Virus record (IMG/VR): IMGVR_UViG_3300035698_035366
Coordinates: 62,001 to 126,000 of that record
Reading direction: 5' to 3' (one strand)
Length of the DNA: 64,000 bases
This document shows positions 14,483-21,109 of this stretch, one piece after another. The notes under the pieces are model-generated. The model was given only the letters and a program-made list of their open reading frames with translations, made no database searches and was not told the DNA's origin. The position numbers and the translations under genes are program-made. Position 1 is the first letter of the stretch. Every line of letters begins with the position of its first letter.

Positions 14483-15118
14483 ATGTATAGACGCGGTTTA
14501 ACAGAGGTATTGAATTTCAAGCAGTCACATGCAGAAATCCTCACAGAGGATAGAGCAGATGGCGGTAAGAACCTTTATATGAAGGGGATTTTCTTGGAAG
14601 GAGATGTGCGTAATCATAACCAAAGAGTTTATCCAACTAACGAGATTAAGACGGCAGTGGAGACACTAAACGAGACAATCCGTGATGGAGAAAGCATCCT
14701 TGGTGAAGCGGATCACCCAGAAGAATTAAATATCAACCTTGACCGTGTTTCCCATGAAATTACTGAAATGTGGATGGATGGTTCCCGTGGTTGTGGTAAG
14801 CTAAAAGTGCTACCAACACCCATGGGGAACATCGTTCGAACATTATTAGAAAGCGGCGTGAAACTAGGTGTTTCAAGTCGTGGTTCAGGTAATGTAGACA
14901 ACAACGGTATGGTTTCCGAATTTGAAATTGTTACTGTCGATGTTGTGGCTAAACCAAGTGCTCCAAGTGCCTATCCTAAGGCAATTTATGAAGCATTTAA
15001 TATGCCACGTCACGGTGCAATTGTTGAAGACTTAGCCGTTGCTATGCAACACGATCCAAGAGCTCAAGCGTTTCTCGCAGAGAAACTACTAAAGTTCATG
15101 GAAAGTTTAAAAAGTTAA
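14483..15118 (+). CDS. Prohead protease (T4 gp21-like)
   Basis: YMKGIFLEGDVRNHNQRVYP, LGEADHP, LGVSSRGSG, DVVAKPSAPSAY. Confidence 0.93.
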   Translation: MYRRGLTEVLNFKQSHAEILTEDRADGGKNLYMKGIFLEGDVRNHNQRVYPTNEIKTAVETLNETIRDGESILGEADHPEELNINLDRVSHEITEMWMDGSRGCGKLKVLPTPMGNIVRTLLESGVKLGVSSRGSGNVDNNGMVSEFEIVTVDVVAKPSAPSAYPKAIYEAFNMPRHGAIVEDLAVAMQHDPRAQAFLAEKLLKFMESLKS

Positions 15119-15130
15119 AGGAGATGGTCC

Positions 15131-16378
15131 ATGGATATCATTAAAAGTCTCCTTGAAAGCGAAGGCCTAGACGATAAGTTGAAAGCCAAGCTTGAAGAGG
15201 AATGGAACGCCAAACTTGAAGAAGCCCGTGTTTCTGTTCGTGAAGAAGTTGAAGTAGACATTCGCGAAGAGTTCGCACGTCGTTTTGAGACAGACCGTGC
15301 TAAGATGGTCGAAGCAATGGATAAGTTCATGACCGATTCTATTACTAAGGAACTGGAAGAATTTCACGAGGATCGCCGTCAGGTGTTCGAAGCTCGTGCA
15401 AAGCTTGCTAAACAGATCCGAGAAAATAAGGAATCAGTTGCGAAGACATTATCTGGTGCATCCGCCGTTCTAGAACAGTTTGTTTTGGGCAAGGTTAAAG
15501 AAGAACTAGGTGAGTTCATGCAGGACAAGAAGGCACTAGCCGAACAGCGTAAAGCAATGAAGGTTAAATTGGAAGAGCAGCAGACGCAGCTTAACCAGAT
15601 TACCGCAGAGCGTATCGGTAAGCTAGAGAAGTTTATTACTCGTAAGTTGTCTGAAGAAATTCAGGAATTTGAGACTGATAAGCACGAACTAGTAGAGCAG
15701 AAAGTCCGCATGGCACGTGAAGCAAAGGCAAAACTTGATGAAACACGCAAGAACTTTGTACAGCGTTCAGCTCGTCTAGTAGAACAGACTCTAAATGAGT
15801 CACTACAAAAAGAATTTACTCGTTTCCGCGAAGATATTAAGGCAGCACGACAGAATCACTTCGGTCGTAAAATCTTTGAATCCTTTGCAGCAGAGTATAT
15901 GACATCTTATCTTTCCGAAGGTTCCGAAGTCAAGAAGTTGTCCAATATGTTGGAAGAGAGCAAGTCACAAACGGCTAAAGCTCTTAACACACTTAAAGAA
16001 CAGCAGAATGTCATCGGTGGCCTAAACCGTAAGGTTCAGGTTACAGAAGGAAATGCTAAGAGAACAAAACTCATGACAGAACTATTGTCTCCATTGTCTC
16101 GCGACAATAGAAGCATTATGGAAGAAGTGTTAAGCAACGTGAAGACTGAGCGTCTACGTGAAGCTTTCAAAAAGCACCTACCATCAGTTCTAAATGAGAA
16201 TCGCGGTGCAGCGCGTCGTAAGGAAAATCTTTCCGAAGACCGTGCGGTACCATCCAGGAGAGTTGTTGAAAAGACCGGTAACAAAAAGACTCGAGTAGTA
16301 ACCGAGAATAGACAGCTAGAACAAAGTGCAGGTGATGATAATGTCGTAAGACTTCAAAAGCTTGCCGGCATTAAATAA
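15131..16378 (+). CDS. Prohead core scaffold (T4 gp22-like)
   Basis: Coiled-coil, between protease and MCP; FGRKIFESF motif. Confidence 0.75.
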   Translation: MDIIKSLLESEGLDDKLKAKLEEEWNAKLEEARVSVREEVEVDIREEFARRFETDRAKMVEAMDKFMTDSITKELEEFHEDRRQVFEARAKLAKQIRENKESVAKTLSGASAVLEQFVLGKVKEELGEFMQDKKALAEQRKAMKVKLEEQQTQLNQITAERIGKLEKFITRKLSEEIQEFETDKHELVEQKVRMAREAKAKLDETRKNFVQRSARLVEQTLNESLQKEFTRFREDIKAARQNHFGRKIFESFAAEYMTSYLSEGSEVKKLSNMLEESKSQTAKALNTLKEQQNVIGGLNRKVQVTEGNAKRTKLMTELLSPLSRDNRSIMEEVLSNVKTERLREAFKKHLPSVLNENRGAARRKENLSEDRAVPSRRVVEKTGNKKTRVVTENRQLEQSAGDDNVVRLQKLAGIK

Positions 16379-16404: not shown

Positions 16405-17640
16405 ATGACTAAACTTTTTGAATCACAGTGGAAGAAGACAAAGTCCGCTCTTTGCGAAGGCAGAGATTTAGAATTTAACCAGGATGGTTCCCGTAACGAA
16501 ACTAAGAAAGCAGTTATGGAAACAATTTTGGAAAACACACACAGAGAAATGACCCGTCTGGGTCAGATGCCTTTGATGGAAACAGCAACAGCGGGATCAT
16601 CTTCTGCTGGTAATATTGCTACTCTAAACAAGGTTATTCTACCAGTTATCCGTCGTGTTATGCCAACCGTTATTGCTAACGAAATTATTGGTGTTCAACC
16701 AATGACAGGACCAGTAGCTCAGATTCATACACTTCGCGTTCGCTACGGCGACACTGTTCCATCACTAGGTGGCGGTGTAACAGCAGGTAACGAAGCACTA
16801 TCACCATTTGATATCGCTCGTTATTACTCAGGTAATGAAGATGTAACAACTCCACTAGCTGCTCCTACAGCACGTCTAGAAGGTGTTCCAGGCAACCGCT
16901 TGAACATTGAAATCCTAAAGGAAGTTGTTGAAGCTAAGACACGTCGTCTATCCGCACGTTGGACCTTTGAGGCTCAGCAGGATGCACAGGCACAGCAGGG
17001 CATCGACATTGAAGCAGAAATTCTTGCAGCATTAGCTCAGGAAATTACCGCTGAAATTGACCAGGAAATTCTTGGTTCCCTACGTCGTCTACCAGGCGCA
17101 CCAACAATTACCTTTACACAGGGTACAGTTACAGGTACTCCAACATTCGTTGGTGACACCCACGCTGCCCTAGCAGTTCTAATCAACCAGCAGGCCAACC
17201 TAATCGCTGCACGTACACGTCGTGGCGCAGGTAACTGGGTTGTTGTTTCTCCAACTGCTCTAACCGTTCTACAGTCTGCTACAACATCAGCATTCGCACG
17301 TACAACTGAAGGTGTTTTCGAAGCACCAACAAACACAAAGTTCGTTGGTACTCTTAACTCTTCAATGCGCGTTTATGTTGATCAGTATGCAGATGATGCA
17401 ACCCCAGTCCTAGTTGGATATAAGGGTGATGGTGAAATTGATGCCGCAGCTTATTACTGCCCATATGTTCCACTAACATCTTCTGGTGTTGTTATTGATC
17501 CACAGACATTCGAGCCAGTCGTATCCTTCATGACACGTTATGGCTACCTAGAGCTAACCAACTCCGCTACCTCTCTTGGTAACGCTGCTGATTACCTAGG
17601 CCTAATCGGAATCGACACTGCAACTCTAAAGTTCCAGTAA
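16405..17640 (+). CDS. Major capsid protein (T4 gp23-like)
   Basis: IRRVMPTVIANEIIGVQPMTGP, AKTRRLSARWTFE, YCPYVPL, FMTRYG. Confidence 0.95.
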   Translation: MTKLFESQWKKTKSALCEGRDLEFNQDGSRNETKKAVMETILENTHREMTRLGQMPLMETATAGSSSAGNIATLNKVILPVIRRVMPTVIANEIIGVQPMTGPVAQIHTLRVRYGDTVPSLGGGVTAGNEALSPFDIARYYSGNEDVTTPLAAPTARLEGVPGNRLNIEILKEVVEAKTRRLSARWTFEAQQDAQAQQGIDIEAEILAALAQEITAEIDQEILGSLRRLPGAPTITFTQGTVTGTPTFVGDTHAALAVLINQQANLIAARTRRGAGNWVVVSPTALTVLQSATTSAFARTTEGVFEAPTNTKFVGTLNSSMRVYVDQYADDATPVLVGYKGDGEIDAAAYYCPYVPLTSSGVVIDPQTFEPVVSFMTRYGYLELTNSATSLGNAADYLGLIGIDTATLKFQ

Positions 17641-17667: not shown

Positions 17668-17696
17668 AACCCGGGGCTTTATGCCTCGGGTTTTTC
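17668..17696 (+). terminator. Intrinsic terminator after MCP
   Basis: AACCCGGGGC-TTTAT-GCCTCGGGTT followed by T run. Confidence 0.8.
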
Positions 17697-19334
17697 TTTA
17701 TTCCATACCCAAACATTATTGCCACAATCCCATATTCTATCATACCCAATTGTTTGCATATATTTCCATTCAGATAAGTCTGTTTTTGGTAATTTTTTCT
17801 TTTGATATTTATAACGTGATTCCCTGATTTCATAATTTCGTGTATATGAATATCCTGGAGATGTCATTTTTTTGAATTTGAATTTATTATGTTTGTACAC
17901 ATTACCATTACCGTATCTTAAATCAGCATATGATAATATAGTATCCGGATCATTATTCTTTATAAAATAATTTAATAACCTTGAAAATCCACCAGTAACA
18001 GTTGTTCCTTGCAAGGAAGTAAATCTAGTCAATTCCCATTCATATGATCTATCAAATCTGGATTTTGAAAATGATGCAACTGATACCAGTGAATCGTCAT
18101 ATACTAAACCAATGTTTATAAGCGAATTTATATGGCCCTGTATATGATTTTTATTATGAAATTTTTGAACATCAGAATTGGATAACTCATTTATGGAACA
18201 TTTTCTTGCCATCAATTTGTTGTTAAAAATTCCCAATTTAGCCGATATAACCGATTTAACAATATCTTGTTTTTGTTTCCATTCATCACTAAAAATTGTT
18301 ATAAGTCTGATTCCTTTATCATTACATTTTACAAATTTATCTTGATGGTATTTTGGATGTTTCGATGAACTTAATTCAGAATGCCAATACAAACCACAAT
18401 ATTCAATTGCAATATTATTATCTGGAATTAATATATCCAATTCATATGGATTAATTAATGATCTATCTCCTGACAATGCATTTACACCTAATGATTTTAC
18501 AAAATCAAATACTTCTAGTTCTTCTCTAGATTTATAAATTACAGGCGTAGGGTTGCATATTTTGCACTCGGGACGTCGACCATTATCAATATACGTGGAG
18601 AACGTATGATCACAACTTATACATTCAAAATCATAATATTTTTGATTTGAAACACCTTCATATAAATCAATTGGTGTTATAAACTTTATATTACAATTTT
18701 CTTTATAATATTCATTTAATTTTAGATATGAAATTCTTTTGAAATGCTCATTCGTATACAATTTTCTTCTAGTTGCTGCTGATTTCCTAGCTACAACTGG
18801 ATCCACCATTGGGTTTTTTTCAGTCAACCGTTTCATAACGTGGGGGAGATGGGCAGCATTTTCAACACCATATCTATCCATCATTGTTTGTTTATGTGTA
18901 GCTAGTTGTTTTTTTATATTATTCTGACTTGCGTAGAAAATCTGGTGTTGTTTTCGAGCATGTTCTGATTGCCCAGCGTTTTCTACACCATATTTTTCTA
19001 AATTTGTTTGATACCTTTTTTCATTAATTTGGTCCTTTTCTTCTTTGTTATATGATTGTTTGGACTGACTTACCTTTTCGGAGACCGTTTTTCTTGCGCA
19101 CTCGCATACACCAGTCCTACCGCAGAACTTATATCCTCTAACAATTGAATCGAATTTTTTCGTATTACCATTAACGCAAATGTTTAATCCTGGATAGATT
19201 TTATTATACACAAATTCTGCAAAAGGAGACGAGTTATCAAACGCAAGCCAATCCATTATTTCAGGATCTTTTTTCAAAAACCTTGAATAATGTTTTGGAT
19301 AATCGTCAATTGTCTTTAGTATTTTATCCCGCAT
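17679..19334 (-). CDS. Free-standing putative homing endonuclease
   Basis: Repeated xxKYGVEN, Zn-finger CxxC pairs, ELDILIP..IAIEYCGLYWH nuclease motif; very low GC. Confidence 0.7.
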   Translation of the reverse strand: MRDKILKTIDDYPKHYSRFLKKDPEIMDWLAFDNSSPFAEFVYNKIYPGLNICVNGNTKKFDSIVRGYKFCGRTGVCECARKTVSEKVSQSKQSYNKEEKDQINEKRYQTNLEKYGVENAGQSEHARKQHQIFYASQNNIKKQLATHKQTMMDRYGVENAAHLPHVMKRLTEKNPMVDPVVARKSAATRRKLYTNEHFKRISYLKLNEYYKENCNIKFITPIDLYEGVSNQKYYDFECISCDHTFSTYIDNGRRPECKICNPTPVIYKSREELEVFDFVKSLGVNALSGDRSLINPYELDILIPDNNIAIEYCGLYWHSELSSSKHPKYHQDKFVKCNDKGIRLITIFSDEWKQKQDIVKSVISAKLGIFNNKLMARKCSINELSNSDVQKFHNKNHIQGHINSLINIGLVYDDSLVSVASFSKSRFDRSYEWELTRFTSLQGTTVTGGFSRLLNYFIKNNDPDTILSYADLRYGNGNVYKHNKFKFKKMTSPGYSYTRNYEIRESRYKYQKKKLPKTDLSEWKYMQTIGYDRIWDCGNNVWVWNKEKPEA

Positions 19335-19440
19335 CGATGTGTCATCCTTTGAACCAGTTATATATTAAATATAGTGTATTTATATTAATAAATCAATAAA
19401 TAATATTGACTATTACTTGATCATTACTATAGAATATAAT

Positions 19441-19590
19441 ATGGATAATAAAAACGATAAAGAAATTAAAGTTACAATGTCAAAAACCCAAGTCTTGGCG
19501 AAGAATAGAGCATTAAGTGCTGACTGGACATTTGAAATTCTTCAAGATCTTCAAACCAATCAGGCCAATCCAAAGGAATGTTATGAGTAA
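19441..19590 (+). CDS. Array micro-ORF1 (49 aa), MCP fragment ~aa166-195 + repeat tag
   Basis: MDNKNDKEIKVTMSKTQVLAKNRALSADWTFEILQDLQTNQANPKECYE. Confidence 0.75.
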   Translation: MDNKNDKEIKVTMSKTQVLAKNRALSADWTFEILQDLQTNQANPKECYE

Positions 19591-19744
19591 TAAACCAGCA
19601 CAACCGCAAAATTGGATTTCGAATGATATTAATGTAGGACTCCATTTTCCAAGCAAGGGGATAGGAAAATTATCATTCAGGAACTCAAAAGAAATTTTAT
19701 TAAATATGACTAATAGAGCGGAACCAAAGGAATGTTATGAGTGA
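19583..19744 (+). CDS. Array micro-ORF2 (53 aa)
   Basis: MSNKPAQPQNW..NRAEPKECYE; ATG overlaps ORF1 stop. Confidence 0.7.
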   Translation: MSNKPAQPQNWISNDINVGLHFPSKGIGKLSFRNSKEILLNMTNRAEPKECYE

Positions 19745-19892
19745 CATAAAAAATAAAGAATATAACAAATTGATCTTTTCAGATATTATTAATGGTCAAA
19801 TTATGCATGAAACAAAGTTCATCAATATTAATAATTGGCAACTTCATAAATATCGAATTAATGAATGTAATCCAAAGGAATGCTATGAATAA
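19737..19892 (+). CDS. Array micro-ORF3 (51 aa)
   Basis: MSDIKNKEYNKLIF..INECNPKECYE. Confidence 0.7.
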   Translation: MSDIKNKEYNKLIFSDIINGQIMHETKFININNWQLHKYRINECNPKECYE

Positions 19893-20034
19893 AATAAAAC
19901 CATCAATCTTTAACGTTGAGGAAGAACTACGTGAAATATTAGCTGCTGAAATATCGCAGGAAATAGATCGGGAAATTATGGAAAAAATTTATAAAGAAAT
20001 GGAAAAAGCTAATCCAAAGGAGTGTTATGAGTGA
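19885..20034 (+). CDS. Array micro-ORF4 (49 aa), MCP fragment ~aa200-226 + tag
   Basis: MNKIKPSIFNVEEELREILAAEISQEIDREIMEKIYKEMEKANPKECYE. Confidence 0.72.
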   Translation: MNKIKPSIFNVEEELREILAAEISQEIDREIMEKIYKEMEKANPKECYE

Positions 20035-20197
20035 TATATATAACGAAATAGAAAATATAGTTCACGGTTTGGTGGGATATAAAGGAAAAATGAAATATGA
20101 ATCCGCCACTTTTTATTGCCCATATGTTCCATTAACATCATTTGGGGTTATAGATCAAACCGATAATTATGCTAATCCAAAGAATTGCTATGAATAA
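20027..20197 (+). CDS. Array micro-ORF5 (56 aa), MCP fragment ~aa336-366 + tag
   Basis: MSDIYNEIENIVHGLVGYKGKMKYESATFYCPYVPLTSFGVIDQTDNYANPKNCYE. Confidence 0.78.
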   Translation: MSDIYNEIENIVHGLVGYKGKMKYESATFYCPYVPLTSFGVIDQTDNYANPKNCYE

Positions 20198-20360
20198 TTC
20201 AAATAATTCAAATAATCCTAATCAGGTATTGTTACCAATAATTCGAAGAATTATGCCTAATCTAATTGCTAATGAAATTATCGGAGTTCAACCAATGACA
20301 GGGGAAACGGGGGCGATTTTCACAGGTAATAGAGCAAATCCAAAGCATTGTTATGAATAA
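20190..20360 (+). CDS. Array micro-ORF6 (56 aa), MCP fragment ~aa75-109 + tag
   Basis: MNNSNNSNNPNQVLLPIIRRIMPNLIANEIIGVQPMTGETGAIFTGNRANPKHCYE. Confidence 0.8.
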   Translation: MNNSNNSNNPNQVLLPIIRRIMPNLIANEIIGVQPMTGETGAIFTGNRANPKHCYE

Positions 20361-20511
20361 ATTTAAAAAACAGGTTGAAATTTTAGAAGAAGCACAACAC
20401 GTTTTTCTTAAATTATCACCGTGGACAAAAAACCTTAGCGAGTTGCAAATGGATATTAATTATATCCTAGATAAAGTTGAGCAATGTAACCCTAAAAATA
20501 GTTACGAATAA
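20353..20511 (+). CDS. Array micro-ORF7 (52 aa)
   Basis: MNKFKKQVEILEE..KVEQCNPKNSYE. Confidence 0.7.
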   Translation: MNKFKKQVEILEEAQHVFLKLSPWTKNLSELQMDINYILDKVEQCNPKNSYE

Positions 20512-20557: not shown

Positions 20558-21109
20558 TTGTGGGTTGGTAATATGCAAAAAGTTTTTAAACAGGATGCGC
20601 AAATTTATAAAAGAGGTGAAACTTATCATTTCAAATGGATAGTGAAGAACCTTACTGAACATCGTATACCATTAAAGCCAGGCATGGTTTTATTGGATGA
20701 AAATCGCCCTAGTGTTCATCCAAGATTTCGCCCAATCGAATGGAATGCAGTTGAGGCAATTGAGCCAAAAGAAACAATCATTATATTGGATCAAGAATTG
20801 TATCCAGATAGAGTCGATAATTACCGTTTCAATTTTGAAGCATACAATACTATTGGAATTGGGGATATCTGGCATCAGTGTTATTACATCACTGAAAAAC
20901 AACGCAAAAATATCGTTAAAAAGCTAAACGAGCTAAGTGATAGAGAGTTACCGCAAGCTTGGTATCTTACAAAGAATGACACTGATAAACAGTTAAATGC
21001 CGCATTAGCCGGAAATGGAATGAAATCAATTATAGAGATATATATGGAAGAAGGATTTAATCCAGATCCAATAAATAAACCAAATAGTGTTACGCTCGAC
21101 AAACTGTAA
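20558..21109 (+). CDS. Hypothetical protein
   Basis: 183-aa ORF right after the array. Confidence 0.6.
   Translation: MWVGNMQKVFKQDAQIYKRGETYHFKWIVKNLTEHRIPLKPGMVLLDENRPSVHPRFRPIEWNAVEAIEPKETIIILDQELYPDRVDNYRFNFEAYNTIGIGDIWHQCYYITEKQRKNIVKKLNELSDRELPQAWYLTKNDTDKQLNAALAGNGMKSIIEIYMEEGFNPDPINKPNSVTLDKL

What the first reader, a model, noticed from the sequence alone, without database searches (positions are those of the whole stretch)
19441..20511. Array of seven coupled micro-ORFs, four being scrambled major-capsid fragments with a shared C-terminal tag
Seen: seven 49-56 aa ORFs all ending [A/C][N/E]PKx[C/S]YE*. Hand alignment to this window's MCP gives ORF1 15/30 identical (aa~166-195), ORF4 11/27 (~200-226), ORF5 18/27 (~336-362) and ORF6 22/28 (~75-102). 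The order is scrambled, every frame is open and the uniform size argues against a decayed MCP copy. Knowledge: MCPs trigger anti-phage sensors (Lit via Gol, CapRel-SJ46). Inference: a cassette library of capsid-epitope decoys that blunt host immunity, or dominant-negative peptides against competitor capsid assembly. I know no described system like this.
Basis: partly seen in the sequence, partly recalled or inferred. Interest (0 to 1): 0.95.

Follow-up and report, generated by a model that had tools for sequence, protein, structure and literature searches.

The report
Tagged virion-protein-fragment mini-gene array
A giant salt-lake phage carries an operon of seven tiny coupled genes, four of them short conserved pieces of its capsid protein (three of unknown origin), all ending in a tail that copies the capsid-maturation protease's own processing-site motif; the same design recurs in at least six other uncultured phages, has not been described, and may be a way to blind host immune sensors.

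Summary
Window 19441-20511 holds seven coupled ORFs of 49-56 aa, each overlapping the next by 8 nt, and all ending in P-K-x-[C/S]-Y-E-stop. Four are significant matches to separate invariant segments of the gp23-type capsid protein (MCP). Three are orphans.

New findings:
- The design recurs in at least six more uncultured phages. One is a syntenic ortholog in which every frame and tag is kept, although the peptides are only 30-70% identical while the MCP is 98% identical.
- Sister arrays also hold portal, prohead-protease and fibre-motif fragments.
- The tag is constrained as a peptide, not as DNA. Its codons vary synonymously, and terminal cassettes keep it after losing the embedded ATG.
- The tag copies a motif otherwise found only in the prohead protease (YPKAIYE here, PKEITE in T4). 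That motif lies in a flexible linker 40 aa from the C-terminus and fits the Φ-x-E cleavage rule.
- A conserved sigma-70-like promoter suggests early expression.

Best reading, unproven: early-made mimic peptides with a virion-protein "address" and a protease-site "handle". They would hide protease activity or capsid motifs from host sensors. Packaged cargo and assembly poisons remain open alternatives. No translation evidence, cultured carrier or published description was found.

The parts
19406..19435 (+). Sigma-70-like promoter TTGACT-18 nt-TAGAAT, ending 5 nt before the m1 ATG, which implies a nearly leaderless first cistron
   Evidence: It scores 10 of 12 in the consensus scan, joint best in the region. 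The block TTGAC(T/A)ATTACTTG is conserved upstream of the orthologous L108 array although the flanks have diverged. No T4-type late promoter (TATAAATA) lies on this strand upstream.
19441..19590 (+). m1, 49 aa: MCP segment aa 166-198 plus the tag ANPKECYE. By alignment this is T4 gp23 ~250-282, a strand plus the short P-domain helix.
   Evidence: Ortholog b1 in L108 is 47% identical. T4 mapping.
19583..19744 (+). m2, 53 aa: body of unknown origin plus the tag AEPKECYE
   Evidence: The ORF and tag are. No match in the window, the phage genome collection, PHROGs or the MCP profile.
19737..19892 (+). m3, 51 aa: body of unknown origin plus the tag CNPKECYE
19885..20034 (+). m4, 49 aa: MCP spine-helix segment aa 201-223 (T4 gp23 ~285-307) plus the tag ANPKECYE
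   Evidence: Family F4 also contains b5 (L108) and d3 (L109). T4 mapping.
20027..20197 (+). m5, 56 aa: MCP P-domain sheet and P-loop segment aa 336-363 (T4 gp23 ~436-461) plus the tag ANPKNCYE
   Evidence: Family F5 also contains b6 and g1. T4 mapping.
20190..20360 (+). m6, 56 aa: MCP N-arm, Gol-type segment aa 66-109 (T4 gp23 ~93-126) plus the tag ANPKHCYE. This is the most widespread cassette type.
   Evidence: Family F6 also contains b7, c2, a2, g3, f0, f1 and f3. T4 mapping. [quoted passage not shown]
20353..20511 (+). m7, 52 aa: body of unknown origin plus the terminal tag CNPKNSYE, in which TAC replaces TAT so that no ATG follows
   Evidence: Ortholog b8 in L108 is 53% identical and also uses TAC. 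Relative to the consensus tag it has 5 synonymous and 2 non-synonymous changes.
14972..14992 (+). Motif Y-P-K-A-I-Y-E (aa 164-170) in the gp21-type prohead protease gene (14483-15118). It is the apparent source or model of the tag and a probable C-terminal self-processing site.
   Evidence: In the AlphaFold model it lies in a flexible linker with pLDDT below 50, between the catalytic domain and a helical tail. T4 gp21 cleaves after L/I-x-E and is itself C-terminally processed (PMC9026906).
16405..17640 (+). gp23-type major capsid protein gene, parent family of m1, m4, m5 and m6
   Evidence: Pfam Gp23 1e-92 and PHROG 138. It aligns to T4 gp23* structures.
20573..21109 (+). 178-aa gene of unknown function directly after the array. 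Its membership in the system is uncertain.
   Evidence: It is found only in the array-bearing loci window, L108 and L110, at 77-78% identity. It has no Pfam or PHROG hit and only weak Ig-like leads. It is absent beside the arrays of other clades.

Best explanation
Window 19406-20511 is one operon, probably early and read by host RNA polymerase, of seven translationally coupled mini-genes.

Each product has two parts:
- An "address" of about 35-45 aa. In four of the seven it is a copy of a family-invariant segment of the major capsid protein's N-arm or P-domain. In sister arrays the address can also be a piece of the portal, the prohead protease or a fibre-type motif.
- A C-terminal "handle", P-K-x-C-Y-E-COOH. 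It copies the residues just upstream of the prohead protease's own conserved, probable C-terminal processing site (Y-P-K-A-I-Y-E|A here, P-K-E-I-T-E|S in T4) and stops exactly at the Glu after which that protease cuts.

The peptides therefore look like ready-made cleavage products, or uncleavable pseudo-substrates, of the maturation protease, joined to motifs of head proteins.

Most likely mode of action (inferred): made before the real late proteins, they occupy whatever recognises these short motifs. That could be the protease's substrate groove when the enzyme is free in the cytoplasm, and/or host sensors that fire on prohead-protease activity (CBASS tripwire loops) or on short capsid motifs (Lit with Gol and EF-Tu, CapRel). 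Abortive-infection immunity would then not be triggered.

The identical tag DNA also carries the next cassette's start codon. Recombination between tags would therefore keep every cassette in frame, although cassette exchange by this route has not been shown.

Shown: the anatomy, the origin of the addresses and of the handle, peptide-level constraint, recurrence in several phages, and patchy, fast-evolving distribution. Inferred: translation, timing, binding partners and the counter-defence effect.
For: **Anatomy and chance.**

**Peptide-level constraint on the tag.**
- 25 tags from six loci vary synonymously at every conserved codon: CCA 15/CCT 4/CCG 3, AAA 16/AAG 7, TGT 16/TGC 7, GAA 15/GAG 10.
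- The Shine-Dalgarno sequence is absent from the tags of L090, yet P-K-H-C-Y-E is kept.
- The terminal cassettes m7, b8 and d4 keep the motif but switch TAT to TAC, which removes the ATG.

**Recurrence.** 38 tagged cassettes occur in 7 phage lineages: window 7, L108 8, L110 3, L090 4, L109 4, L111 3 and L114 9.

**Tested origins of the addresses.**
- 17 cassettes match the MCP profile.
- a3 is a prohead-protease fragment (4e-11).
- f9 is a portal fragment (PHROG 213, 8e-7).
- a1 and f6 carry a fibre-type structural motif.

**Selection.**
- The ortholog L108 keeps all frames.
- Head genes are 92-98% identical between the two phages, but the cassettes are 30-70% identical with dN/dS 0.25-0.52.
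- Cassettes keep MCP-invariant residues (52-64%) far more often than variable ones (13-40%).

**The tag is a protease motif.**
- P[KR]x[CIVLM]YE occurs 14 times in 468,265 aa against 0.8 expected. Twelve of these are in prohead proteases and two in tags.
- All 76 protease orthologs have AYPxxΦYE 40-44 aa from the C-terminus.
- The motif aligns to T4 gp21 PKEITE|S.
- It lies in a disordered linker before a helical tail.

**Literature.**
- gp21 cuts after L/I-x-E and is C-terminally processed (PMC9026906).
- CBASS is activated when gp21 cuts a tripwire loop (PMC12991175).
- Lit and CapRel sense MCP through short motifs, and many sensors target core virion proteins (preprint 10.64898/2026.01.04.697583).

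**Accessory character.**
- The array is absent from 80 MCP-relative loci.
- It sits in hypervariable regions and in different genome contexts.
- A conserved sigma-70-type promoter precedes it, and no late promoter does.
Against: - There is no evidence of transcription or translation. No RNA run is listed, and the DNA runs show no variants.
- No binding or phenotype data exist, and no cultured phage carries the array.
- The tag has Cys where the protease motif has Ile, Val, Met or Leu. No protease ortholog has Cys there, so it is not a plain copy of a good substrate.
- Free-carboxylate product mimics are usually weak protease inhibitors (general knowledge).
- If the protease is the target, the need for capsid or portal addresses is unexplained. 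If sensors are the target, the need for a protease handle is unexplained.
- The Gol peptide activates Lit rather than blocking it, so a Gol mimic could be harmful to the phage.
- 17 of the 38 cassettes have no identified origin.
- No partner gene is conserved beside the arrays of different clades.
- The Acb5 (anti-CBASS) flag near the L114 array was not reproduced.
- L090 shows a frameshifted cassette and one without a start codon.
- The timing rests only on a consensus promoter match and analogy with T4.
Confidence: 0.4

Rival explanations
1. Head-targeted cargo. The tag acts like a capsid-targeting sequence. By docking to the prohead protease or core, it loads the mini-proteins into proheads. 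They then stay in the head, like T4 internal proteins and internal peptides, and are injected into the next host.
For: - T4 internal proteins are small, hypervariable and share a 10-aa targeting peptide that ends at a protease site (I-A-E). The gp21 propeptides are suspected to target it to the core, and T4 heads retain Glu-ended peptides (PMC9026906).
- The tag equals the protease-site motif.
- The addresses come mostly from prohead components.
- L118 has MCP-fragment mini-proteins with a shared N-terminal motif instead, the usual position of a targeting sequence.
Against: - The tag is C-terminal and ends at the Glu, so nothing can be cleaved off.
- The tag corresponds to the part that stays on the mature protease, not to its removed propeptide.
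- The promoter looks early rather than late.
- According to the same review, small fragments mostly escape from proheads.
- There are no virion proteomics data.
Confidence: 0.17
2. Assembly or maturation poison aimed at rivals. The peptides insert into, or cap, the capsid-protein, portal or protease contacts of co-infecting T4-like phages or capsid-hijacking satellites, or they block the rival's protease. This would be a dominant-negative form of exclusion.
For: - The four MCP pieces are the N-arm, the spine helix, the short P-domain helix and the P-loop. These regions hold the intercapsomer contacts, the head-length mutation sites and the portal contacts in T4 (PMC9546572).
- The fragments keep pan-family residues, not their own lineage's residues.
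- They diverge quickly while their own MCP stays constant.
- Distribution is accessory and patchy.
Against: - The resident phage's own MCP and protease carry the same invariant residues and the same motif, so the phage would be expected to poison itself.
- Early and continuous expression would overlap its own assembly.
- No self-immunity feature was found.
Confidence: 0.15
3. Self-regulation. The peptides are accessory morphogenesis factors of the phage itself. They keep its protease zymogen or unassembled capsid protein quiet or soluble until the prohead forms.
For: - The tag equals the protease's own site.
- Free gp21 is harmful and is normally limited by autoproteolysis (PMC12991175).
- The P-domain segments contain the chaperonin-bypass positions of gp23 (PMC9546572).
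- In clade A the array sits in the head module.
Against: - It is absent from about 80 close relatives with near-identical head genes.
- The peptides diverge to 30-70% identity while their supposed targets are 97-98% identical.
- In other clades the array sits among DNA-metabolism genes.
Confidence: 0.1
4. Ribosomal natural-product precursors. The conserved C-terminal heptapeptide is a recognition (follower) sequence or a Cys/Tyr/Glu modification site for a tailoring enzyme.
For: Tandem small ORFs with one conserved end and one hypervariable part resemble precursor-peptide arrays. Cys, Tyr and Glu are chemically reactive residues.
Against: - No modifying enzyme is conserved next to the arrays. 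The neighbours differ by clade.
- The variable parts are recognisable copies of virion proteins that keep their invariant residues, which such a model does not predict.
- The tag is explained by the protease motif.
Confidence: 0.04
5. No peptide function. The array is debris of gene fragments spread by a selfish cassette, a by-product of the neighbouring homing endonuclease, or a repeat whose only role is the DNA or RNA coupling signal (Shine-Dalgarno plus ATG).
For: - The tag DNA contains AAGGA and the next ATG.
- A homing endonuclease lies between the MCP gene and the array.
- L090 has one frameshifted cassette and one start-less cassette.
- dN/dS is only moderately low.
Against: - Frames are kept open in 7 lineages (P about 3e-13 for this window alone).
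- Tags vary synonymously and survive loss of both the Shine-Dalgarno sequence and the ATG.
- MCP-invariant residues are preferentially kept.
- Endonuclease homologs sit beside the MCP in array-less relatives, and arrays occur without any endonuclease.
- Nucleotide identity to the MCP gene is only 48-70%, with the longest identical run 17 nt, so there is no recombination or antisense role.
- No Rfam family matches.
Confidence: 0.05

Closest known systems
T4 internal proteins (IPI, IPII, IPIII) with their capsid-targeting sequence
   Same: They are sets of small, fast-evolving, patchily distributed phage proteins that share one short terminal peptide tied to the prohead protease's L/I-x-E specificity (PMC9026906). 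As I recall, IPI* counters a restriction system.
   Different: - The T4 targeting sequence is N-terminal, is cleaved off, and precedes a real folded protein.
- Here the shared peptide is C-terminal and ends at the Glu with nothing to cleave.
- Here it copies the protease's own motif, and the bodies are fragments of virion proteins.
- Here the genes are coupled through the tag itself.
Gol peptide of T4 gp23 and the Lit protease / EF-Tu exclusion system
   Same: By alignment, the m6-type cassette is the Gol-equivalent segment of the capsid protein. A short stand-alone piece of this region is known to be biologically active, since it binds EF-Tu.
   Different: - Gol is part of the full capsid protein and is the trigger of host suicide, not a phage countermeasure.
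- No natural stand-alone Gol gene, tag or array has been described.
- EF-Tu binding by m6 is untested.
Protease-tripwire immunity (CBASS CD-NTase activation loops cut by gp21; NLRP1/CARD8 in animals) and pseudo-substrate inhibitors of proteases
   Same: The tag carries the recognition side of a prohead-protease site. Hosts are now known to sense exactly this enzyme's activity (PMC12991175).
   Different: - The tripwire is a host loop that is cut.
- The tag belongs to the phage and cannot be cut.
- No phage-encoded inhibitor or buffer of its own prohead protease is known.
- Inhibition by the tag is untested here.
Phage decoy or mimic anti-defence proteins (for example DSAD1 against DSR2, DNA mimics such as Ocr, nucleotide sponges)
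   Same: They are small, accessory, rapidly evolving phage proteins that act by occupying a host sensor. DSAD1 is from PMC11087589 as listed. The other examples are from my own knowledge.
   Different: The known examples are single folded proteins unrelated to the sensed phage protein. Here the mimic is a literal fragment of the sensed protein, organised as a multi-cassette library with a common tag.
Tandem precursor-peptide genes of ribosomal natural products; CRISPR arrays (formal resemblance only)
   Same: Both show a repeat-plus-variable-unit architecture. Precursor arrays have one conserved end and a hypervariable remainder.
   Different: - Neither a tailoring enzyme nor cas genes are present.
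- The units are about 150 nt long and are protein-coding, with start and stop codons inside the repeat.
- The variable parts are homologs of the phage's own genes at only 48-70% nucleotide identity.

Membership tests
T4-type internal proteins with a capsid-targeting sequence | A shared N-terminal peptide of about 10 aa that is removed by the prohead protease at L/I-x-E | tested here: not met
   The shared peptide is C-terminal and is followed directly by a stop codon. The N-termini (MS., MN.) are dictated by the overlap with the preceding stop codon.
T4-type internal proteins with a capsid-targeting sequence | The shared peptide conforms to the prohead-protease site rule (hydrophobic residue, any residue, Glu) | tested here: inconclusive
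   The tag ends in C-Y-E. The homologous protease motif has I/V/M/L-Y-E, but Cys is never seen at that position in 76 proteases.
T4-type internal proteins with a capsid-targeting sequence | The protein is present inside the mature head and is injected | not testable with these tools
   There is no cultured phage and no virion proteome.
Gol-type activator peptide (gp23 residues ~93-122) | Homology to the Gol region of gp23 | tested here: met
   The m6 core aligns to MCP aa 76-109, which aligns to T4 gp23 ~93-126. The exact Gol coordinates are from my memory. The review confirms a 29-residue region in the first quarter of gp23 that is the most conserved part of the protein.
Gol-type activator peptide (gp23 residues ~93-122) | Binds EF-Tu domains II-III and licenses Lit cleavage | not testable with these tools
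   This is a biochemical property.
Decayed or pseudogenised MCP duplicate | Collinear remnants with stops or frameshifts and neutral evolution | tested here: not met
   - Each piece has its own start, stop and tag.
- All frames are open in the window and in L108.
- dN/dS is 0.24-0.52.
- MCP-invariant residues are kept preferentially.
Ribosomal natural-product precursor array | A co-located, conserved tailoring enzyme or recognition-element protein | tested here: not met
   The neighbours differ by clade: a 178-aa unknown gene, a DpdA/TGT-like gene, a phosphoribosyltransferase and a 262-aa unknown gene.
CRISPR-like or non-coding repeat array | Non-coding repeats with short spacers; an RNA family or cas genes | tested here: not met
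   The units are coding. There is no Rfam hit. The repeat varies synonymously.
Homing-endonuclease mobile unit | The array and the endonuclease occur together | tested here: not met
   Endonuclease homologs lie beside the MCP in the array-less loci L006, L008, L012 and L043. The arrays in L090, L109, L111 and L114 have no endonuclease.
Translationally coupled polycistron | The start codon of each gene overlaps the end of the previous gene | tested here: met
   The 8-nt overlap ATGAGTAA (or ATGAATAA) is present at all six junctions in the window, and a purine-rich AAGGA lies 5 nt upstream of the ATG in four of the six. Actual coupling has not been measured.

The most novel reading that the evidence does not exclude
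T4-superfamily phages maintain exchangeable libraries of "self-epitope" mini-proteins. Each is a short invariant motif of a core virion protein (capsid, portal, protease or fibre) fused to an uncleavable copy of the maturation protease's own cleavage-site motif. Made early, they pre-empt host pattern-recognition and protease-tripwire immunity. This would be a protein-level, modular counter-defence strategy with no described precedent. The many untagged or differently tagged capsid-fragment mini-genes found in passing would be variants of the same principle.
Probability: 0.35. Interest if true: 0.95.

Novelty: categorically new. Interest (0 to 1): 0.86.

Why it matters
Bacterial immunity is now known to read phage infection through conserved virion proteins and through the prohead protease's activity. 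How phages hide these unavoidable signals is largely unknown, apart from point mutations and nucleotide sponges.

A modular set of early-made fragments of the sensed proteins, all carrying a copy of the protease's own site, would be a new kind of answer. It also gives a directly testable handle. The tag is six residues long, the cassettes are about 50 aa, and T4 gp21 carries the homologous motif (PKEITE), so the idea can be tested in the T4, CBASS and Lit systems in E. coli.

Whatever the function, three results stand on their own:
- A conserved motif at the probable self-processing site of gp21-type proteases has been identified.
- Stand-alone Gol-type mini-genes turn out to be common in metagenomic T4-like phages.
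- The repeat design, with the start codon inside the tag so that recombination between tags would keep cassettes in frame, suggests a simple route to building peptide libraries.

Tried and rejected
- **Tag as a purely DNA-level signal.** Rejected as the sole explanation. The tag varies synonymously, L090 tags lack the Shine-Dalgarno sequence, and terminal tags lack the ATG yet keep the peptide.
- **Fusion of the seven ORFs by +1 frameshifting.** Every junction is a +1 step, but each cassette has its own ATG there, there is no slippery site, and the fused order would not form a capsid fold. I did not pursue it further.
- **Link to the homing endonuclease.** Rejected.
- **Recombination or antisense role through MCP-gene homology.** Rejected. 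Nucleotide identity is 48-70% and the longest identical run is 17 nt.
- **Recent capture from a particular rival lineage.** Not supported. The fragments are about equally distant from all gp23 lineages.
- **Origins of m2, m3 and m7.** Nothing was found by BLAST against the window, tblastn against phage genomes, PHROGs, or profile searches of all held loci. A weak, repeated m2 match lay on the wrong strand of an upstream gene and was dismissed.
- **A conserved partner gene.** The 178-aa gene is restricted to clade A. The gene after the clade B arrays looks like a DpdA/TGT DNA-modification enzyme. The Acb5 flag near L114 was not reproduced.
- **A natural protein ending in the tag.** None is present in the held loci.
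- **Recurrence of the array's promoter motif in the window.** It is no more frequent than chance.
- **Expression and population data.** No RNA run is listed, and all salt-lake DNA contigs are identical. L001 is 100% identical to the window.
- **Chance or unrelated pattern hits.** Five of seven metagenome hits, most single-tag viral hits and the one genome hit were non-coding repeats or chance matches.
- **A method note.** For a local BLAST only, I joined the two halves of the frameshifted L090 cassette. The tools themselves received the pieces separately.
Full report
**1. What is there**

Window 19441-20511 contains seven + strand ORFs, m1 to m7, of 49-56 aa. Each ends in [A/C][N/E]-P-K-x-[C/S]-Y-E-stop.

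The tag coincides with a DNA repeat of about 24 nt (consensus AATCCAAAGGAATGTTATGAGTAA). It occurs 7 times in the window against 0.14 expected by chance. The repeat does two jobs:
- Its Tyr-Glu codons (TAT GAR) contain the ATG of the next ORF, so neighbours overlap by 8 nt and each ORF sits one frame further on.
- In this window, its Lys-Glu codons spell an AAGGA Shine-Dalgarno sequence.

Seven open frames of this length at 30.5% GC have a chance probability of about 3e-13. A sigma-70-like promoter (TTGACT, 18 nt, TAGAAT) ends 5 nt before the m1 ATG. A strong terminator follows the capsid gene upstream. No Rfam family matches the region.

**2. Surroundings**

The array lies in a T4-type head module:

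| Feature | Coordinates | Evidence |
|---|---|---|
| gp21-type prohead protease | 14483-15118 | Pfam Peptidase_S77, 9e-26 |
| 415-aa gene in the scaffold position | 15131-16378 | PHROG 10922 |
| gp23-type major capsid protein (MCP) | 16405-17640 | Pfam Gp23, 1e-92 |
| Homing endonuclease, minus strand | 17679-19334 | PHROG 3339 |
| The array | 19441-20511 | this report |
| 178-aa unknown gene | 20573-21109 | no hit |
| Further virion genes | downstream | |

The source is a jumbo phage. The same sequence occurs on contigs of 296 kb and 363 kb from salt-lake metagenomes.

**3. The capsid-fragment claim holds**

| ORF | MCP residues | BLASTP E | Clade profile E |
|---|---|---|---|
| m6 | 66-109 | 2e-13 | 6e-17 |
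| m5 | 336-363 | 1e-9 | 2e-12 |
| m1 | 166-198 | 1e-5 | 5e-9 |
| m4 | 201-223 | 4e-3 | 1e-5 |

All four also hit PHROG 138. m2, m3 and m7 match nothing.

The fragments are old and constrained:
- Nucleotide identity to the MCP gene is 48-70%.
- Synonymous sites are saturated or nearly so.
- dN/dS is 0.24-0.45.

I mapped the four pieces onto T4 gp23 using the alignment to solved structures and the residue landmarks given in PMC9546572:
- m6 is the N-arm or Gol-type region (about 93-126, around Met98).
- m1 is the strand and short P-domain helix (about 250-282, including A268 and A275).
- m4 is the spine helix (285-307).
- m5 is the P-domain sheet and P-loop (about 436-461).

These regions carry the chaperonin-bypass, head-length, intercapsomer-contact and portal-contact positions. 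[quoted passage not shown]

**4. It is not unique**

None of 80 loci around related MCP genes has the tag. Pattern and profile searches of larger collections found more carriers:

| Locus | Content | Context |
|---|---|---|
| L108 | 8 cassettes | Syntenic ortholog of the window |
| L110 | 3 cassettes | Followed by the same 178-aa gene |
| L090 | 4 cassettes | Between a phrog_12062 gene and a DpdA/TGT-like gene, near DNA polymerase and QueC |
| L109 | 4 cassettes | Same context as L090 |
| L111 | 3 cassettes | After GTP cyclohydrolase I |
| L114 | 9 tagged cassettes plus 2 untagged ORFs | 70.6-kb contig |
| L097 | 1 tagged ORF | Doubtful; may be a chance match |

That makes 38 tagged cassettes in seven lineages. 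The consensus tag is P-[K/R]-x-C-Y-E-stop, with Tyr or Ser rarely replacing Cys.

With tags removed, the cassettes form families shared between phages. Tested origins:
- 17 are MCP-derived: eight m6-type, three m1-type (one of them fused to an m4-type segment), three m4-type and three m5-type.
- One is a prohead-protease N-terminal piece (a3, 4e-11).
- One is a portal piece (f9, PHROG 213, 8e-7).
- Two carry a fibre-type structural motif (a1 and f6).
- 17 are orphans.

No deposited phage genome has a stand-alone copy. I found no paper describing such arrays.

**5. Selection**

Between the window and L108:

| Gene | aa identity | dS | dN/dS |
|---|---|---|---|
| Protease | 97% | 0.35-0.44 | 0.04-0.13 |
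| 415-aa gene | 92% | 0.35-0.44 | 0.04-0.13 |
| MCP | 98% | 0.35-0.44 | 0.04-0.13 |
| Five alignable cassettes | 30-70% | 0.85 to saturated | 0.25-0.52 |

All eight frames and tags of the L108 array are nevertheless intact. The array is therefore a deeply diverged or exchanged accessory module under moderate purifying selection, and the fragments do not track their own phage's capsid protein.

What the fragments do keep are the MCP-family-invariant residues: 52-64% identity at invariant columns against 13-40% at variable ones. Their best database matches are MCPs of distant gp23 lineages.

The tag is constrained as a peptide:
- Every conserved codon varies synonymously across 25 tags.
- L090 tags have no Shine-Dalgarno sequence.
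- The terminal cassettes m7, b8 and d4 keep the motif but use TAC for Tyr, which removes the now useless ATG.

One relative shows damage. In L090, one cassette is split by a frameshift in an A-run and another has no start codon.

**6. Where the tag comes from**

The window's own prohead protease contains Y-P-K-A-I-Y-E at residues 164-170.
- All 76 protease orthologs in the held loci have A-Y-P-x-x-[I/V/M/L]-Y-E, always 40-44 residues before the C-terminus.
- The motif aligns with P-K-E-I-T-E|S of T4 gp21 (PDB 5jbl).
- In 468,265 aa of held ORFs, the pattern P[KR]x[CIVLM]YE occurs 14 times against 0.8 expected. Twelve are in proteases and two in array tags.
- An AlphaFold model (mean pLDDT 81) puts the motif in the only disordered stretch (158-166, pLDDT below 50). 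It lies between the last strand of the catalytic domain and a helical tail.
- The orthologs also share an N-terminal hydrophobic-x-Glu motif at residues 6-9.

According to PMC9026906, gp21 cuts after Glu in L/I-x-E and is itself processed at its C-terminus. Short propeptides ending at such sites target T4 internal proteins into the head.

The tag is thus a copy of the P6-P1 side of the protease's probable self-processing site, with Cys in place of the aliphatic residue. It ends exactly at the Glu. The peptides look like finished cleavage products or uncleavable pseudo-substrates.

**7. How it most likely works**

*Established.* It is a conserved, modular, coupled operon of two-part mini-proteins: a virion-protein motif plus a protease-site mimic. 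It is accessory, fast-evolving and placed in variable regions.

*Inferred timing.* The promoter block is conserved between the window and L108 and is of the host sigma-70 type. T4-type late promoters (TATAAATA) precede several other genes, including the endonuclease, but not the array. By analogy with T4, this suggests early or middle expression, before the real late proteins appear.

*Relevant host biology.*
- CBASS enzymes carry a loop that is cut by gp21 at I/L-x-E, and this switches immunity on. gp21 alone suffices (PMC12991175).
- Lit and CapRel recognise capsid proteins through short motifs. Many STAND sensors recognise capsid, portal and other core proteins, sometimes together with EF-Tu (preprint 10.64898/2026.01.04.697583).

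*My best reading (confidence about 0.4).* The peptides are early-made mimics that occupy the protease's substrate groove and/or the sensors of these motifs, and so delay or prevent abortive-infection responses.

*Rivals.*
- Head-targeted cargo (0.17).
- Dominant-negative poison of rival phages or satellites (0.15).
- Self-regulation of assembly (0.10).
- Natural-product precursors (0.04).
- No peptide function (0.05).

*Weak points.*
- There is no expression or binding evidence.
- The Cys is unexplained.
- No single model yet explains why both an address and a handle are needed.
- Gol is an activator of Lit.

**8. Comparison with known systems**

The nearest analogue in design is the T4 internal-protein set with its shared targeting peptide. 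That peptide is N-terminal, cleaved, and attached to unrelated proteins, so membership fails on the defining feature.

The m6 cassette is homologous to the Gol region, but Gol is a trigger inside a full capsid protein.

Known phage decoys are single proteins unrelated to the sensed protein. No enzyme, cas gene or endonuclease is consistently linked to the arrays.

I therefore rate the architecture as categorically new. Its function is still open.

Noticed in passing
P0002 (L084 809-1087), P0003 (L086 911-1147), P0014, P0022, P0056, P0059, P0062, P0067, P0069, P0076, P0091, P0104-P0106, P0108, P0130, P0131, P0144, P0146, P0155: There are dozens of untagged stand-alone mini-proteins (about 60-160 aa). 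Each consists of an unrelated N-terminus, the m6/Gol-type capsid segment, and often an acidic tail. The two contexts I examined lie among early or DNA-metabolism genes: after a dCMP-deaminase-like ORF, and coupled to a gp47-like nuclease. Some other hits in the same list are just frameshifted or partial capsid genes.
   Followed up: partly
L118 451-1617 (ORFs 466-636, ~988-1209, 1161-1379, 1363-1617): A different design with the same theme. Four small ORFs share an N-terminal motif E-(A/E)-(D/N)-E-I-(V/I)-R-R-L. Two of them carry capsid segments, one m6-type and one weakly m4-type (MCP-profile E = 0.008, with an SRW motif of the m1 region by eye). None has a C-terminal tag. L117 shows an m4-type fragment followed by an m6-type mini-protein with an acidic tail.
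   Followed up: partly
L014 6855-7256 (-): A 133-aa ORF directly after the capsid gene, on the opposite strand. Its C-terminus is an m5-type capsid segment (…VGYK…FYCPYVPLT…GVI…) fused to an unrelated N-terminal part.
   Followed up: no
window 17679-19334 (-), with TATAAATA at 19377-19384 (-): A 551-aa homing endonuclease (PHROG 3339, 1.6e-109) is inserted between the capsid gene and the array, preceded by a T4-type late promoter. Diverged homologs occupy the same place in L108 and in the array-less relatives L006, L008, L012 and L043.
   Followed up: partly
L090 2740-2760 and 2904-2945: Signs of decay or assembly error in one array. Cassette a0 ends in a tag with a 3-aa insertion (PKQIRHCYE) and TAC, which leaves the next cassette (a1) without a start codon. 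Cassette a2 is split by a 1-nt frameshift in an A6 run.
   Followed up: partly
L114 6407-6851; L114 11880-12023 (-); L114 2418-2645 (-): - Two untagged ORFs (53 and 96 aa) sit inside the tagged array.
- A 47-aa minus-strand ORF elsewhere on the contig also ends in TPKACYE.
- A nearby 75-aa gene carried a precomputed Acb5 (anti-CBASS) flag that my Pfam scan did not reproduce.
   Followed up: partly
L097 276-617: A 113-aa ORF in an unrelated 10.7-kb viral contig ends in YPLTPKECYE-stop, with the full ATGA-overlap tag DNA, and is coupled to an untagged 90-aa ORF. It may be a single-cassette carrier or a chance match.
   Followed up: partly
L004 11524-14558 (-): In the closest array-less relatives, the space after the capsid gene is filled by about ten tandem minus-strand ORFs of 80-120 aa that look like paralogs of one another. 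This would be another small-gene expansion at the same hypervariable spot.
   Followed up: no
L087 1030-1420; L088; L089/L092/L093; L107 6349-6490: These are non-coding tandem or dispersed repeats (periods 46, 74 and ~143 nt) that happen to contain a tag-like string (for example GAACCAAAACATTGTTACGAG). I judged them chance matches to the degenerate pattern.
   Followed up: partly
window 14483-14510 and protease orthologs: gp21-type proteases of this clade share an N-terminal hydrophobic-x-Glu motif at residues 6-9 (LTE, LIE, LVE, LRE), parallel to T4's LIE-9. This suggests trimming at both ends.
   Followed up: no
L090 3240-8193; L111 2849-3589: Arrays of clades B and C sit next to genes of a 7-deazaguanine DNA-modification pathway: a DpdA/TGT-like gene, a QueC-like gene and GTP cyclohydrolase I.
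   Followed up: no
P0093, P0141: Two untagged m6-type mini-proteins begin with what look like export signals. One is twin-arginine-like (SRRWFLGGALAVPAAA). This is odd for a capsid-derived peptide.
   Followed up: no
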